Positions 1-6,459 of a stretch of 64,000 bases of DNA are shown here, in pieces (position 1 is the stretch's first letter; every line of letters begins with the position of its first letter). The stretch is from Perna viridis (Eukaryota). The translations under genes were made by a program, and so were the position numbers. Location: assembly GCA_037379345.1 (NCBI GenBank), contig CM074516.1, positions 49,079,626 through 49,143,625 on the forward strand, read 5' to 3'. Below the pieces are notes generated by a model. It worked only from the letters and a program-made list of their open reading frames with translations. It ran no database searches and had not been told where the DNA came from.

Positions 1-199
1 GAAAGAAGTAATACTCTATGCAATTATTTGGTTTTGTACTTATTACACAATTTGATTTCCTTCCTACCATATATTATTTTTCATTTCACCCTACATTGAA
101 GAACAAAGGTTTGTGAACCAATATAAAAGGTTTTCTTCCTGGAAATTGCACTAAACTCGTTAATGACTGTAACTTGTCATTATTGGTACTGGTACTTAC

Positions 200-3100
200 A
201 TTTTCAATGTCCTCTACAAGTTCATCAGGTAATGGAGACGCTGTCATAAAAATCCTGTTGAGTTTGTTAGCCGTTTTAGACAGGCATATTTGATCAGATG
301 ATTCACTGATAGTCTCCTTGTATGTCACCAGTGGTTGTGAAATCTGTTGGTATAAAATACAGACGTTTTCTTTCTTTTTTCATGGTGGATCATCGAGTTA
401 AATCATTTCTACACCTTAATTAAAGTTGAAGCATTGGAAATTGACAATATATTCATATGGAGTTCATCTACCCAGTAATGAAATTATAGGCGTTATGTTT
501 TCAGTACACATGTATATCAAGATAGCACATTTTAAAATGTGAAATCAATGTATTGTATAATATTTAACATACTAACCAATGCATGAACTTACGTTTAAGG
601 GCACACCAGCATGCTCATTTTCAAGATCTTTCAAACAAATCTCTAGATGGAGCTCTCCAGCCCCTGATACAATGTGTTGTCCCCCCTCTACAGTAACCTG
701 GACCAGGGGGTCAGATTTAGCCAGTCTCTTTACTCCCTCCACAAGCTTGGGTAAATCAGCTGCGTTCTGTACATCTACCGCTATTCTTACCACAGGACTA
801 ACAGAGAACTTCATCACCTGAAATAATTAGATGTAGTGGTTGGATTGACTTTGGTGTATTAATCTAGTATTTGACATAGGAAAAGGGACTTTGCTTCACA
901 TAAATACGACCGTTATGGTTATATTTGTTTTCTACATTCTGAATCAGTTCTATTTCATTGGGTTTTTTTACCCAAGAACTTATACAAATGTAACACACAT
1001 TTTAAAGTTAGCATCAATACAAAAACCGATTATACAAAAACTGCCAATATGTATGTTCGGTATGTGTAAACGTGTTTAAAGAATAAACTCTCATCAGTAG
1101 AATTCATACTAATTAACTCCATAGGAAAATCTAAATCCGAAATAAATCATATACAGGAAGCAGTCGAAGCCAAAACTGTCAAAATCTAGTAGGATAAATG
1201 AATTACCCGGTTACATACCTTCATGTTATGTGCATGTTCATATGTAGTTAGAGTTCCTGATCGTACGATATATTGGTCTATACCCGACAGCCCCACTACA
1301 CTGCCACACGGGACATCATGTATTCCCCCAGAAATACCAGATCCCATCATTATATTAATGCTGAAAAAAAACCATGATGAATAAAAATGTCTAGGTGGTA
1401 TAAACATGCAGTACTAATGTCGGGTATTGTGTTCATTTTACAAGGGAATGAAGTTATTTACAGACACAAGACAAGGTTTTTTTAAAATACATTTATGTGT
1501 ACCCTATTTTTATGCATTTTAAGTGTAAGTATTTGTAAGAATCAGGCAAAATAGGAAGAATCAGAAACATGCATGTCAAAACCCCACGGATCTGACAATA
1601 CAATATCACCCAAGGATACTTTCTCTATTTGAAAAAAAAAACATTATTTGATCTCTGCATCACTGGCTTAGCTCAGAAAGTTTTCAATAGAATGTCAGAA
1701 AAATGAGGTTTTTGACAGAGTTAGCTGCCCTTGAAATGTTCATTTTCAGTGCATTTCAATAAATTTTAACTGAATGCATCAACATTATATGGAAAATATT
1801 GCCTTCTTTCCTTGATTCTGATGGTGTAAACAGTCAAATTACACTATCAAAATGTTTTTTATACCATGTTTCACCCACTGCCAGATTCTTACAGAGACTG
1901 ACACTTAAAAAGTTCTCTTGATAATACTTGTGAGGCAATTATATCATTCAAAACTCAATGTCTTTTGAAAATCGCTCATATCTTAATTATTTTTTAACCA
2001 TATTTCCCTTACATAGATGATTATATTAATATAGTCCATCCACCGTATTTGTTCTATCAATCGTTTCTTGTGCACTTTCTTGTTACTATACTAGTGTTTT
2101 ACAACCATGCAACAAGCAATTGCGCGTACCTTGGAACTTTCTTCACCCATAAGTCTCTCTTTGCACCGGGTTGATAGTTCGGACCCATTATCCTGACCAT
2201 CTGTCCAGATGTTATTGTTCCAGAGAAAACTCTACCAAAAGCGTAAAACCTGCCCTTATTAAGTGATGGTACCATCTTTGAGATATACAGCATTAGAGGT
2301 CCTTCGGGGTTGCAGGTTTTCATTGCTGAAAAGGACAAAAAGTAATTCATATTTATAAACACCATCTGTCAAATCTATTATGTTTAAAGAACCTAGCTAA
2401 GCCTAAACTGAACTGAGGTTTTATTTAGTTACTCGTTAGGTTAGAATTAGGTTTATAACGTTGTTTATCAACATATATAAACTGTGCGCTTTCTTACCGA
2501 TTGCTGCTTCGTCGTCTTCAGGACCTTCATATAACAGTTCTGTACGGTATTTCTGTGAGGTGACGGGTGAAGGTAGATGTACAACAAACATTTCCAACAA
2601 AGCGTCATCAACTGGTAGCCATTTTTTCATCACAGTTCTCATCAGTGTCTTTCCTTCAGTTCCCATCTCCTCGGTTGTTAGACTGACTTTGATCTTCTGT
2701 ACCAACATCAACAACTCGGTCTTATCTTGGGCTTTCGTGGAATGAAGAATCTTAAAAAAAAACAAACACTACAATATCTTTTACAAAAATATGAGAGATG
2801 CTTGAATTTCTTAAAAACAAGATTTTAAACTGTTGCTTCGAGATTAAAGAGCAACCTATTATACAATAAGTCTTTGTTGAATTTGACAGTAAGCCGGATA
2901 TAAGAACCCAGTCGAAATAACATAAGAATCTTCTATTAGGCTTTACTCCATATAGTAGTTTATATACAAATACATTGTTAAGTAATTAAAGAGCTAATTG
3001 TAGTTAGTTAAACATACCCTATACAAGGGTTCCACCACAAACTTGTTGAAGCCACGGACACAGTTTTCTTCCTTTTCAGTGCACCATTTCTTTGTCACCG

Positions 3101-5179
3101 TGTTGTAGTAGTTATCTCCCCATAGTTTAGTTAGCATCTTTTCCTCTTTAACACCCAATTTCTCAGAATACATTTTGGCAAAACGCCTCAGGGTAAACCC
3201 CCATCGATGCAGACCAGAACCAAATGCAACATTGCACCTTGAAGGATCCACCTAAAAGATGAGAAGACACTTAAATTGTATACATCTGTTAAAATATTGT
3301 AATTCTCTAATAAGAGAAGCCTAAGCCTTTAAAAGAATGGAGAAAAAATACTCATGCTCTTCCGGTGTGTACTAGCATTTAGCCCCATTAGTGCAATTTT
3401 CAATAAAACTAAACAACTACAAGTTACTAGAGGTTCACTGGTTATAATACCTTCGTTAAGATTCGATTTACGGCGAGGTCACACACTGAGTGGCCAGAAT
3501 ATATAGCTAGTACAACATTGTATTAGATATTATATTTACCGTAAGGTCACCCATTGAGTTCTCAGAATATGTAGCTACCACCACATTGTAATGCTCTACA
3601 ACTCTCCGTAAAGTCTGGTACAGTTCCTCTGGTAAAAGTTGGGTCTCGAACACACATCTATCTATCTTGTTGATCATCAACACGGGCTTGATTCGCTCAC
3701 TTAGAGCCTGTCTCAGTACAGTTTCTGTCTGTACACAAACACCTACAATATCGAATCGAGTGTGTTTCATTTTGTAATTTTTGTGCGTGTGTGAATTGCA
3801 AATATTTCAATCAATGAACTACATAATACAAGCAAGTGAAACAAAAAAAACTATTTCAATATGTATAAAATAAATGTCCGACATTTAACAGAAAACCGCT
3901 GGATAAAAAGAGAAACATGCATCCTGGCCTCACGTGATATGCGCAGATTCAGAGATTTTGGTACAGGAGTTCCCACATTATATCGGTCATTTTTTTATCC
4001 CAAAATGCATGAAATAACAACATTTTTATACAAAAGAAGGTGTTCATGTAACCATTGGACCCCTGAGTCCGCCAATGCGTGATCAGATGATTAATCCTTA
4101 CCACTGATACTATCCACGACTACAAGTGCCCCGTCAGCTACCCTCAGTGCCGCCGTCACCTCAGAGGAGAAATCCACGTGACCAGGAGAATCAATTAGAT
4201 TGACAATATACTCATTAGATTCCTGCTTCTGGTATCTTAAAGGGAGAATTCTATGGTCCACATCATACAGCAAGGAAACCGCACTGAAATAGAAAGATTC
4301 CGGGTGTGATTAACGAGAACTTGTCGGGGTTTTTTGGGTATAAAGCTACAAAATGTAACTCCTTTCAGTAAAACTTAAAAACTTTTATATAGTGAGTAGC
4401 AAAAAAATGTTACTTTACGCTTTTTTCAAAAACTCGCACTCAAATTTACGAAATTGTACGCTGAAACTTCCGTCTGGAAGTAAGTTTGGTAGAAAACCTA
4501 TCACTGAAATACTTAAAAACAAGCGCAACAAACACAGAATTGAGATGAAGATAAATATAGACATGAAGAAGTATGTGTTTCAGTCAAAGGCGCCAGACTT
4601 AGCGTTTAATTCATTTCGCTAAAAGTTTACAACTTACGTTGATTTGATGGTTATTCCTTTTTCTTTTTCGTCAATCCTGGTATCCATGGCACATTTATCC
4701 CCCGCCTGGTGGGCAGCGATGAAGCCTGCCCTGGCCAAGAGGGAATCTGTCAAAGTTGTTTTACCATGGTCAACATGGGCAATTACAGCCATATTCCTGA
4801 TGTTCTGAGGGCGGTCCATGGCCCTCCTTAACTCTTCTACTGTAAACTTTACCTGCAATAGGTATGGATGTTTTTGCATTTCAAGATAATAACTTGCATG
4901 TGTTGTTCAGAGCTTTTATCTTATTTTGTATTTTCTGCATCGTAATAAGGAATAAAAATCACGCAAAACAAATCAAAAGATTTTCGTGCGTAAGCTATCT
5001 AATTATAACAAAACACACAACCAATTAATAAACTAAAACAAGAACTATAAAAATCTTTTTTTTTGTGCTATGAAATTATCCCCTCAATTTTTTCTTTGTG
5101 TTTTTGTACTGCCACTCAAATTTACCACGCTCTTTTATATTTGATAAGAAAATGCCTTCTAAATATAAGAACTTACCAT
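200..5179 (-). CDS. EEF2: Divergent eukaryotic elongation factor 2 paralog (eEF2-like); first 10 coding exons, 3' end lies outside the window
   Basis: Exons (minus strand, all GT-AG, frame consistent): 5177-5179 (ATG only), 4638-4852, 4102-4283, 3540-3742, 3018-3251, 2498-2750, 2130-2325, 1219-1360, 593-817, 200-343. Translation includes [130 protein letters not shown] and [15 protein letters not shown], all eEF2 signatures. The ATG-only first exon followed by 215- and 182-nt exons matches the EEF2 gene architecture as I recall it. Confidence 0.93.
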
Positions 5180-5313
5180 TTTTTTTTCAAAATTTCTCCT
5201 CTGAACTCGACTTAAGGCTCGTCCCTATCTAGGGATAAATTTTATTTCCACTTTTTTAAACTTTGAGCTTGACGCTCACATTGTTAAATGTCTACTTCAT
5301 ATCGACTAGTTCC

Positions 5314-5339
5314 TTTTTATAGCGGGGGTATTTCGCAAT
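5314..5339 (-). promoter_or_regulatory. Putative core promoter of the eEF2-like gene: TATA box with adjacent kB-like and C/EBP-like sites
   Basis: Minus-strand TATAAAAA at 5314-5321, about 135 nt upstream of the ATG. GGGGGTATTTC at 5324-5334 overlaps ATTTCGCAAT at 5330-5339 (1 mismatch to the C/EBP palindrome ATTGCGCAAT). Confidence 0.45.
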
Positions 5340-6459
5340 ACTCCACTATTGCACCATCGCTAGAAATTCACTTCGATCATCTCGAAGGTTAGCGTACAAA
5401 CCTAACGGTCGCGTACGTTCGGAATGTATTTAGACGTTAGCTTTAACAATGTATAATGTGTAATGTTCTTAAAATAGAATTTGTAATTCCCTTTTAAATA
5501 CTGTTTAGAAGAAAACGACTACTCAATTAAACAAATGCGTTCCCTTTAAGATACATTAACAGCGTCAAACAATGTCTATTCCAACATCTTCCTACACGTC
5601 AGACAACAAAATCAATTTGATGTGATAACATGTCTGCGAATAATCTAATGAAGAAATTTCTTCGGGCAGGATTACTTAAAGCCTTTTTTCGCTTATTTAT
5701 TATACCTAGGCAGTGAGCAAAATTTTGGCCATAAATAAGCAAACGATCCCTGGAACCCCATTATATAAATTCTGGACCCACCCCTGTTCACACAAAAATA
5801 TTACATGTATTTAAAAATTATGTAATATGCGCCCGTCTGTCATCCTCTTTAGCTGACAATATCACTGATTCATTGGGTTGCACTCGGCATAGGCCCCACT
5901 AAAATTGGGAAAATATTTTGCATGAAATCGTGATTTTTCGCTTGGTCTTAAATTGTATTCCCCACAACTGAAATCTTAAAGGTACTTTCCAGACCACATT
6001 TCGAAGGGACACTTTTGTGAGGGAATGTTGTTTAAAATAATTAACTGCTTGTCCCCTAATATTTTTTTTTTATTGTTACATTTATTTTAATTGGAATTTA
6101 TCAGAAAAAGTTTTCATGCACACTTTTCTTGGGAGTGGACTAAGCTAAAAATCATATATTTTGCTTGACGCTTGGATAGCCCCTTCATTTATGTACCACA
6201 TCCTTTAGACTTGGATTAAATATTCCACAGTTTAAAATCTTAAATGTGATTGATTTTTACTTAAACTGTGATGTCTGAGTGTCATTATGCAGGCACGCGC
6301 ATGGGGTATGTCAGCCAGCGTGCTCAATAAAGTTCTTTAATTTACCGATTTTCAGGAATACACACGATCCGACACAATCAAACAGTTTTCAGAAGGTTTA
6401 TACAGTTACAAAACGGAAATAACCAAGAACATGCAAACAAACAAACTCCATTTTTTAAT

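What the first reader, a model, noticed from the sequence alone, without database searches (positions are those of the whole stretch)
4640..4720. eEF2 paralog lacking the eEF2-kinase phosphorylation site (Thr56->Met)
Seen: residues 51-60 read [10 protein letters not shown] where canonical eEF2 has AGETRFTDTR. Residue 57 (Thr56 in mature numbering; codon 4685-4687) is Met, and the neighbouring Thr54 and Arg55 are also replaced. G1 is GKTT and switch I is KGITI (canonical GKST and RCITI). All 10 exons are intact and in frame. Established: Thr56 phosphorylation by eEF2K is the main switch that shuts off elongation under starvation, hypoxia and Ca2+ signalling. Inference: this is a second, non-housekeeping eEF2 that cannot be turned off at this site and could sustain selective translation under stress.
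Basis: partly seen in the sequence, partly recalled or inferred. Interest (0 to 1): 0.85.

Follow-up and report, generated by a model that had tools for sequence, protein, structure and literature searches.

The report
Expressed, divergent eEF2 paralog lacking Thr56
This animal genome carries, beside its normal translation elongation factor 2 and the kinase that switches it off, a second intact and transcribed eEF2-like gene from a fast-evolving multi-species family; this copy has methionine at the kinase's target threonine, so it cannot be silenced there, but what it does is still unknown.

Summary
On the minus strand, codon 4687-4685 is ATG (Met57, which is Thr56 in mature numbering) inside [10 protein letters not shown]. 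The P-loop reads GKTT and switch I reads KGITI.

- **Gene:** 14 exons and 839 aa, all introns GT-AG, no stops. Four exons lie left of the window.
- **Expression:** spliced contigs from three studies carry the exon joints. A DNA run does not.
- **Same genome:** it also holds a canonical EEF2 on another chromosome (AGETRFTDTR, GKST, RCITIKST; about 59% identical) and an eEF2K orthologue.
- **Family:** the gene is eEF2-type, not EFL1 or Snu114. It belongs to a fully supported clade of seven sampled genes from unnamed assemblies. The clade evolves 2-4 times faster than canonical eEF2 but under strong purifying selection.
- **Shared clade features:** GKTT, an AGxK motif, a clade-specific intron, and loss of Pro596 in the decoding-centre loop of domain IV.
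- **Thr56:** Met is derived within the clade. Of 48 exon-2 fragments, 36 keep Thr, 10 have Met and 2 have Leu.

"Cannot be phosphorylated at residue 56" is shown. "Sustains translation under stress" is untested, and the domain IV changes leave a diverged function open. The age of the duplication is unresolved.

The parts
5177..5290 (-). Predicted exon 1: 5' UTR plus the ATG only (ATG 5179-5177, donor GT 5176-5175). A TATAAAAAGG box lies at about 5322-5313. The 5' limit is approximate.
   Evidence: This is the only ATG|GTAAGT on this strand upstream of exon 2. The canonical gene on C3 has the same ATG-only first exon. The spliced RNA contigs carry 9 and 49 further letters 5' of exon 2 (table 8). 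The joint itself was not among the listed joints, so this exon is predicted, not shown.
4638..4852 (-). Exon 2: N-terminus, G1 P-loop and switch I, including the Thr56 site.
   Evidence: RNA joint 4283|4638 seen in X1, X2 and X3. AG/GT flanks. Pfam GTP_EFTU 1.2e-16. Best PDB match is eEF2 at 4e-26, against EFL1 at 1e-12.
4676..4705 (-). Residues 51-60, [10 protein letters not shown] (canonical AGETRFTDTR). The Met57 codon is 4687-4685. Thr59 (mature Thr58) is kept at 4681-4679.
   Evidence: Direct reading. No variant in four runs (table 3).
4754..4765 (-). G1 P-loop, GKTT (canonical metazoan GKST).
   Evidence: Direct reading. Ser33->Thr is one of 12 positions that separate the paralog clade from canonical eEF2.
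4646..4660 (-). Switch I, KGITI (canonical metazoan RCITI). The Mg-coordinating Thr is kept.
   Evidence: Direct reading. Cys67->Gly is diagnostic for the clade.
4102..4283 (-). Exon 3: G domain, with DSPGH switch II intact.
   Evidence: RNA joints. AG/GT flanks. GTP_EFTU 4.5e-13.
3540..3742 (-). Exon 4: G domain, with the NKID G4 motif.
   Evidence: RNA joints..
3018..3251 (-). Exon 5: G'' insert. It ends at an intron (after about aa 279) that the paralog clade shares and the canonical gene lacks.
   Evidence: RNA joints. Exon bounds compared across loci.
2498..2750 (-). Exon 6: G''/domain II junction.
   Evidence: RNA joints. In 1.84 billion representative proteins only the gene's own fragment reached E<=1e-30, and the next hits were at most 59% identical.
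2130..2325 (-). Exon 7: domain II.
   Evidence: RNA joints. GTP_EFTU_D2 at 27.1 bits, below the 30.3 cut-off for this piece alone.
1219..1360 (-). Exon 8: end of domain II.
   Evidence: RNA joints..
593..817 (-). Exon 9: domain III.
   Evidence: RNA joints. EFG_III 6.4e-13. PDB: eEF2 3e-31, EFL1 5e-14, Snu114 1e-10.
200..343 (-). Exon 10: start of domain IV. The gene continues left of window position 1 with four more exons: L008 9977-9768, 9495-9313, 8929-8797 and 8584-8391, followed by a TAG stop.
   Evidence: RNA joint 343|593. The loose end at 199 in X3 matches the start of the next exon in L008 (table 7). The full model has no stops. EFG_IV and EFG_C are found on the outside exons.
254..277 (-). 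Domain IV loop 2, KTANKLNR (canonical KSPNKHNR). Ser595->Thr, Pro596->Ala, His599->Leu. The tRNA-contacting Lys is kept.
   Evidence: The loop's role is described in PMC6143161. The CDK site Ser595 is described in PMC11660736.

Best explanation
The window holds exons 1-10 of an intact, transcribed gene for a divergent eEF2-type GTPase of 839 aa and 14 exons. It is the second eEF2-type gene of this animal genome.

The canonical EEF2 on another chromosome, and an eEF2K orthologue, carry the usual Thr56 off-switch. The window's gene belongs to a separate, fast-evolving but purifying-selected eEF2-like family found in several other unnamed eukaryotic assemblies. The few taxonomic hints point to spiralian invertebrates.

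**Shown**
- All five EF2 domains, G1-G5 and the diphthamide loop HxDxxHRG are kept.
- Every sampled family member has lost Pro596, so none has the proline-directed Ser595-Pro site. In mammals that site recruits eEF2K.
- This sub-lineage has also replaced Thr56 by Met and His599 by Leu.

**Inferred**
The protein still binds the ribosomal GTPase centre and probably still translocates. It is blind to the eEF2K/CDK control that acts on the canonical copy. Its altered domain IV tip may change how it meets the decoding centre. Its likely role is an eEF2K-independent elongation or ribosome-associated factor used beside the regulated housekeeping eEF2. The cells and conditions in which it acts are unknown.
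For: - **Sequence and model:**. All 13 introns are GT-AG and the 838 codons hold no stop.
- **Expression:** spliced contigs in X1, X2 and X3 (three studies) carry eight GT-AG joints that the DNA run X15 lacks. Fourteen RNA-type runs and three unclassified runs (10 studies including the DNA source) hold about 0.3 of the sampled words, which is roughly the exon share.
- **Single locus, no retrocopy:**
- **Canonical EEF2 in the same genome:**
- **eEF2K orthologue:** an exon matches human eEF2K at 5.5e-33.
- **eEF2-type:** PDB scores. Domains GTP_EFTU, D2, EFG_III, EFG_IV and EFG_C.
- **Family:** 48 exon-2 fragments carry the signature. Seven gene loci form a 100/100 clade outside the canonical metazoan clade. 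They share an intron near aa 279. Twelve positions are diagnostic.
- **Selection:** window gene against L018, pN 0.17 with pS 0.78 (saturated). L031 against L032, omega 0.069.
- **Met is tolerated:** a solved 842-aa eEF2 chain (9rvu_HE) has Met at the same position. So do 29 of the 90 fragments without the paralog signature.
- **Loop 2 and the diphthamide loop:**, with roles from PMC6143161 and PMC11660736.
Against: - No functional data of any kind.
- Contig data cannot give expression level, tissue or stress response. Four RNA-type runs with the same species label hold none of the sampled words, so expression may be restricted.
- 17% of the 380 positions invariant in canonical eEF2 are changed, and 28% in domain IV. 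The Pro-His stack that positions the tRNA-contacting Lys is gone. One family member (L033) has even lost the diphthamide His. The family may therefore have left classical translocation.
- Thr59 (mature Thr58) is kept and could in principle be phosphorylated.
- Most family members keep Thr56, so escape from eEF2K at residue 56 is not what founded the family.
Confidence: 0.6

Rival explanations
1. Neofunctionalised ribosome GTPase. The family no longer acts as the elongation translocase. It uses the eEF2 body for another ribosome-linked task such as hibernation or storage, rescue, subunit quality control or back-translocation, as EFL1, Snu114 and the archaeal aEF-2p paralogs do. Loss of Thr56 would then be simple decay of a regulation that is no longer needed.
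For: - Domain IV is the most changed domain: 48 of 67 invariant positions are kept.
- Loop 2 has lost Pro in all seven genes and His in four. L033 has lost the diphthamide His.
- Branches are 2-4 times longer than canonical ones.
- PMC6143161 argues the same way for archaeal aEF-2p.
Against: - HxDxxHRG and the loop-2 Lys are kept in six of seven and seven of seven genes.
- G1-G5 are intact.
- Domains III and V stay 67-72% identical to the canonical copy.
- aEF-2p lost both loops completely, which this family did not.
Confidence: 0.25
2. Tissue- or stage-specific isoform, for example germline, gamete or larval, with ordinary translocase chemistry. The regulatory sites drifted because eEF2K signalling is irrelevant in those cells. 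No link to stress.
For: - Four RNA-type runs with the same species label hold none of the sampled words, while the 17 listed holders that are not the DNA source hold the exon share.
- Fast evolution under purifying selection is common for reproductive paralogs. That last point rests on general knowledge, not on a test here.
Against: - No tissue labels could be read, because run names are coded.
- The gene was found in nine different RNA-type studies, which argues against a very narrow expression.
Confidence: 0.3
3. Decaying duplicate, misannotated EFL1 or Snu114, or an assembly artefact.
For: Only the high divergence: 59% identity to the genome's own canonical eEF2.
Against: - The 839-codon frame is open, with 13 GT-AG introns.
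- Spliced RNA is seen in three studies.
- pN is far below pS against an orthologue whose synonymous sites are saturated.
- eEF2 scores about 55 bits above EFL1 and 65 bits above Snu114 on exon 9.
- The genome's own two other EF2-family genes are only 41-43% identical.
- The DNA run covers the locus evenly.
Confidence: 0.02

Closest known systems
Canonical eukaryotic elongation factor 2 (EEF2; yeast EFT1/EFT2)
   Same: Five-domain architecture, length (839 against about 842-858 aa), G1-G5, switch II DSPGH, the diphthamide loop HxDxxHRG with its His, the C-terminal ...LDKM, an ATG-only first exon, and several intron positions shared with the genome's canonical gene.
   Different: - About 59% identity to every canonical metazoan eEF2 tested, while those are 72-79% identical to this genome's canonical copy.
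- Lies outside the canonical metazoan clade.
- Thr56->Met, GKST->GKTT, RCITI->KGITI.
- Loop 2 reads TANKLN instead of SPNKHN.
- 17% of invariant positions are changed.
- Four intron positions differ.
Single-copy eEF2s that naturally carry Met or Leu at the Thr56 position (for example the solved chain 9rvu_HE, which from memory resembles fission-yeast eEF2, and many protist-type fragments)
   Same: Met at the eEF2K target position in an otherwise working switch I. This shows the residue is compatible with eEF2 function.
   Different: Those are, as far as I know, the only eEF2 of organisms without a classical eEF2K. Here the Met copy sits beside a Thr56 copy and an eEF2K orthologue in one genome.
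Archaeal EF-2 paralogs aEF-2p (Narrowe et al. 2018, PMC6143161)
   Same: A second, divergent EF-2 gene beside a bona fide one. The G domain is kept and the changes concentrate at the domain IV tip.
   Different: aEF-2p lacks both tip loops and the diphthamide His altogether and occurs in genomes without dph genes. This family keeps loop 1 and the loop-2 Lys.
EFL1/Ria1 and Snu114/EFTUD2 (the two recognised eukaryotic eEF2 paralogs; Atkinson 2015, PMC4342817)
   Same: Same EF2 family fold.
   Different: Far weaker matches. The genome has its own copies elsewhere, on C3 near 52.79 Mb and on C11 near 11.82 Mb, at 41-43% identity. Which of those two is EFL1 and which is Snu114 was not determined.

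Membership tests
eEF2 (eukaryotic EF2-type translocase) | Five domains: GTP_EFTU with G'' insert, domain II, EFG_III, EFG_IV, EFG_C | tested here: met
   Pfam searched exon by exon. GTP_EFTU on exons 2-4, D2 on exon 7 (27.1 bits, under the cut-off for the piece alone), EFG_III on exon 9. EFG_IV on exons 11-12. EFG_C on exons 13-14 (each piece under the cut-off alone).
eEF2 (eukaryotic EF2-type translocase) | Closer to eEF2 than to EFL1, Snu114, aEF2 or EF-G | tested here: met
   Exon 9: eEF2 109 bits, EFL1 55, Snu114 44, EF-G 39. Exon 2: eEF2 93 bits, EFL1 50. The gene is 59% identical to the genome's own eEF2 and 41-43% to its two other EF2-family genes.
eEF2 (eukaryotic EF2-type translocase) | Intact GTPase motifs G1-G5 | tested here: met
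   GKTT, switch I Thr, DSPGH, NKID and SGLH are all read in the spliced model.
eEF2 (eukaryotic EF2-type translocase) | Domain IV loop 1, HxDxxHRG, with the diphthamide His | tested here: met
   HSDSSHRGGGQ on exon 12, just outside the window.
eEF2 (eukaryotic EF2-type translocase) | Domain IV loop 2, SP(N/H)KHN, with the Pro-His stack that positions the Lys (PMC6143161) | tested here: not met
   The loop reads TANKLN. The Lys is kept, the Pro and His are lost. Pro is lost in all seven clade members.
eEF2 (eukaryotic EF2-type translocase) | Falls inside the canonical metazoan eEF2 clade | tested here: not met
   The careful tree gives a paralog clade at 100/100, separate from the canonical metazoan clade at 93/94. 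A position next to the spiralian canonical genes is not rejected (p-AU 0.19).
eEF2K-regulated eEF2 (animal type) | Thr56 phospho-acceptor (and Thr58) | tested here: not met
   Met at position 56, with Thr58 kept. Whether Thr58 alone can be used cannot be tested here.
eEF2K-regulated eEF2 (animal type) | Ser595-Pro596 CDK site that promotes Thr56 phosphorylation (PMC11660736) | tested here: not met
   Thr-Ala in place of Ser-Pro.
eEF2K-regulated eEF2 (animal type) | Is phosphorylated and inhibited by eEF2K | not testable with these tools
   This needs a kinase assay. An eEF2K orthologue is present in the genome.
EFL1/Ria1 | Best match to EFL1; about 1100 aa with large inserts | tested here: not met
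   839 aa with no insert. The EFL1 chain 5anb scores 55 bits against 109 for eEF2.
Snu114/EFTUD2 | Best match to Snu114; acidic N-terminal extension | tested here: not met
   The protein starts 17 residues before the G domain, as eEF2 does. Snu114 scores 44 bits.

The most novel reading that the evidence does not exclude
The family is an ancient third-type cytoplasmic eEF2 subfamily of animals. It would have arisen before the radiation of living animal phyla, as the free tree suggests, and been lost from vertebrates, insects and nematodes. It would provide a translocase, or a ribosome factor with a remodelled decoding-centre tip, that is exempt from eEF2K/CDK control. Animals that keep it would then run two elongation regimes in parallel.
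Probability: 0.15. Interest if true: 0.8.

Novelty: new variant of a known kind. Interest (0 to 1): 0.6.

Why it matters
Phosphorylation of eEF2 at Thr56 by eEF2K is the textbook brake on elongation in animals, and it is treated as acting on a single factor. This genome holds the brake, a brake-sensitive eEF2, and a conserved, expressed eEF2-like protein that lacks both the target residue and the CDK priming site. It is a natural experiment in partial escape from elongation control.

If the protein translocates, eEF2K activation in these animals would not stop elongation uniformly. If it does not translocate, it is a new ribosome-associated GTPase derived from eEF2. The broad survey of translational GTPases (PMC4342817) lists only eEF2, Ria1 and Snu114 for the eukaryotic cytoplasm, so this family appears not to have been described as a unit. 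Gene models of it are probably present in public annotations under "elongation factor 2-like" names.

Tried and rejected
- Searches, structure prediction and complex prediction with the joined (spliced) protein were not run, because the joined model has no reference. All database searches were made exon by exon by reference. As a result no full-length, named orthologue of the paralog could be fetched, and its taxonomic range stays unknown.
- **Exon rows on a full-length scaffold (A2).** MAFFT scattered the fragments.
- **Typed peptides in a script (between).** All later scripts used references only.
- **Representative search with exon 6.** It returned mostly fragments and no full-length member of the paralog family.
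- **Tree with the genome's own two other EF2-family genes as outgroups.** Long branches met and the root was unstable. It was replaced by a tree without them.
- **Naming the organism.** No COX1 is present in the assembly. ORFs in the window have no Pfam family that would help. The ESM Atlas look-up of exon 2 gave only generic GTP_EFTU clusters. The only hints are that the canonical copy groups with a gastropod eEF2, and that an intronless RING gene beside the most divergent family member (L033) has named hits led by molluscs and nemerteans, over its RING domain only.
- **Literature.** No paper describing this family was found. The library is incomplete, so this is not proof.
- **Pseudogene, EFL1 or Snu114, retrocopy.** Considered and rejected (see rivals).
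Full report
**1. The observation.** The finding lies on the minus strand. Reading 4705-4676 gives [13 protein letters not shown] at 4687-4685 is residue 57 counting the initiator Met, which is Thr56 in mature numbering. The P-loop is GKTT (4765-4754) and switch I is KGITI (4660-4646). Four sequencing runs laid on the locus show no other letter at the Met codon (table 3).

**2. Gene structure.** Contigs of three RNA-type runs from three studies (X1, X2, X3; X3 carries a second organism label) were laid on window 1-6000. They show eight joints with GT..AG ends on the gene's strand. The DNA run X15 covers the locus evenly and has none of these joints.
- The verified exons are 4852-4638, 4283-4102, 3742-3540, 3251-3018, 2750-2498, 2325-2130, 1360-1219, 817-593 and 343-200. 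All have AG/GT flanks and together give 598 codons without a stop.
- The loose end of the X3 contig at position 199 matches the first bases of the next exon, which lies left of the window.
- I fetched the 10 kb before the window (L008) and found four more exons ending in ...LDKM and a TAG stop.
- Exon 1 is predicted. It is the only ATG|GTAAGT on this strand upstream of exon 2 (5179-5171), about 135 nt downstream of a TATAAAAAGG box. The canonical gene has the same ATG-only first exon.
- The full model has 14 exons and 839 aa.

**3. Is it eEF2?** Pfam, searched exon by exon, finds GTP_EFTU, domain II, EFG_III, EFG_IV and EFG_C. Against all PDB chains, exon 9 scores 109 bits on eEF2, 55 on EFL1, 44 on Snu114 and 39 on EF-G. 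Exon 2 scores 93 on eEF2 and 50 on EFL1. The genome has two further EF2-family genes, on C3 near 52.79 Mb and C11 near 11.82 Mb. They are only 41-43% identical to the window's gene. The EFL1 refutation test therefore fails, and the gene is eEF2-type.

**4. The rest of the system in the same genome.**
- Searching the whole assembly with exon 2 finds two loci only: the window and C3:33.14 Mb. The C3 gene reads AGETRFTDTR, GKST, RCITIKST, KSPNKHNR and HADAIHRGGGQ, so it is a canonical EEF2.
- The two genes are about 59% identical (43-73% per exon). Their intron positions differ at about aa 279, 316, 476 and 551 of the paralog.
- A multi-exon alpha-kinase gene on C4 matches the catalytic domain of human eEF2K at 5.5e-33, well above myosin heavy chain kinase. 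Two intronless alpha-kinases on C5 are not eEF2K-like.
- The canonical brake is thus present, and the window's gene stands beside it.

**5. A family, not a one-off.**
- A search with exon 2 by reference returned many single-exon fragments from unnamed assemblies. They share GKTT, an AGxK motif and mostly KGITIKST, and most stop exactly at the exon-2 boundary.
- By a position-based rule, 48 fragments carry the signature. At residue 56, 36 have Thr, 10 have Met and 2 have Leu. Met is therefore a derived state of one sub-lineage, whose members are 71-100% identical in this exon.
- I fetched seven loci with such exons and projected them on the spliced model inside scripts. L018 is a clear orthologue at 73% identity, with Met56 and the loop reading TSNKLN. 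L023, L024, L031, L032 and L033 are 58-62% identical and keep Thr56. L022 was too incomplete to use.
- In a careful IQ-TREE analysis with 11 named canonical metazoan eEF2s (sponge, corals, jellyfish, urchin, amphioxus, arthropods, gastropod, nemertean), a plant sequence and another outgroup, the seven genes form a 100/100 clade.
- This clade lies outside the canonical metazoan clade (93/94). The genome's own canonical gene groups with the gastropod (99/98).
- Paralog branches are 2-4 times longer than canonical ones.
- A tree that forces the paralogs together with the spiralian canonical genes is only 9 log-likelihood units worse (p-AU 0.19). The date of the duplication is therefore open: it is either older than the animal phyla, or spiralian-specific with acceleration and long-branch pull.
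- The only taxon hint for the most divergent member (L033) is a neighbouring intronless RING gene. Its named hits are led by molluscs and nemerteans, over the RING domain only.

**6. Selection.** By Nei-Gojobori counting on projected codons, the window gene against L018 gives pN 0.17 and pS 0.78 (saturated). L031 against L032 gives omega 0.069. The family is under strong purifying selection despite its speed.

**7. What has changed.**
- Twelve positions separate all paralogs from all canonical genes, among them Ser33->Thr in the P-loop and Cys67->Gly in switch I.
- Of 380 positions invariant in 13 canonical eEF2s, the window's gene keeps 83% and its canonical sister keeps 97%. Domain IV is hit hardest, with 48 of 67 kept.
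- Loop 1 of the domain IV tip (HxDxxHRG, diphthamide His) is kept in six of seven genes. L033 has Cys there.
- In loop 2 (SP(N/H)KHN) a Lys touches the tRNA and is positioned by a Pro-His stack (PMC6143161). All seven genes have lost the Pro, and four, including the window's, have lost the His. The Lys is always kept.
- The same loop holds Ser595-Pro596. This is the CDK site whose phosphorylation recruits eEF2K and promotes Thr56 phosphorylation in human cells (PMC11660736). No family member has a Ser/Thr-Pro there.

**8. Reading.**
- *Shown:* a real, expressed, conserved eEF2-like paralog without a phospho-acceptor at residue 56 and without the CDK priming site, beside a canonical EEF2 and an eEF2K.
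- *Met is tolerated:* Met at this position is compatible with eEF2 function. A solved 842-aa eEF2 chain (9rvu_HE) has it, as do 29 of the 90 fragments without the paralog signature.
- *Inferred:* it still works at the ribosomal GTPase centre and is blind to eEF2K at residue 56.
- *Not shown:* that it translocates, that it is non-housekeeping, or that it acts under stress.
- The domain IV changes make a shifted function a serious rival, and restricted (tissue or stage) expression is another. Four RNA-type runs with the same species label hold none of the sampled words, but contigs cannot measure expression.

**9. Known or new.** The survey of translational GTPases lists only eEF2, Ria1 and Snu114 for the eukaryotic cytoplasm (PMC4342817). 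My literature searches found no description of this family. The nearest analogy is the archaeal aEF-2p paralog (PMC6143161), which is far more degenerate. I rate the finding as a new variant of a known kind.

**10. Limits.**
- The alignments are projections of tblastn pieces on the window's protein, so they contain a few intron-derived residues at exon ends and drop insertions.
- The other loci come from unnamed assemblies.
- Long branches affect where the clade attaches.

Noticed in passing
window:1517-1910 (intron 7 of the paralog): A 394-bp element with 32-nt terminal inverted repeats (1517-1548 / 1879-1910, 88% complementary), which looks like a MITE. The genome search gave 4,762 first-look candidates, and the 40 that were scored are about 87% identical on many chromosomes. 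Word depth in the DNA run is about 1,500-4,000 times the single-copy level.
   Followed up: partly
L033:13491-13808: The most divergent member of the paralog family has Cys in place of the diphthamide His (HTDPACRKG against HxDxxHRG), in an otherwise well-aligned exon. An animal-type eEF2-like protein without the diphthamide site is unusual.
   Followed up: partly
L018:10928-11257: In the orthologue from another assembly, the end of exon 3 and the start of the intron are repeated in tandem about four times as a 14-codon unit. This is a minisatellite born at a splice donor. It broke my automatic exon model there.
   Followed up: no
P0290 (Lineus longissimus 'eEF2-like', 908 aa) and P0033: These two form a separate long-branch pair inside the canonical metazoan clade (100/100). 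They keep Thr56, RCITIKST and KSPNKHNR and carry an insert after switch I. This looks like a second, independent eEF2 duplication in nemerteans or their relatives.
   Followed up: no
G000:C5:24700921-24701496 and C5:11618862-11619425 (L012, L014): Two intronless alpha-kinase ORFs (309-329 aa open frames) that are not eEF2K-like. Their best PDB matches are a 'putative protein kinase' and myosin heavy chain kinase A.
   Followed up: partly
window:4638-200 and L008: All 13 introns of the paralog begin GTA.
   Followed up: no
G000, whole assembly: No COX1 match anywhere in the 46 contigs, so the mitochondrial genome is not part of this assembly.
   Followed up: no
exon-2 fragments (for example P0155, P0163, P0165, P0173): Many eEF2 fragments without the paralog signature, apparently from protists or fungi, have Met (29) or Leu (8) at the Thr56 position. 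Thr56 is thus far from universal outside animals.
   Followed up: partly
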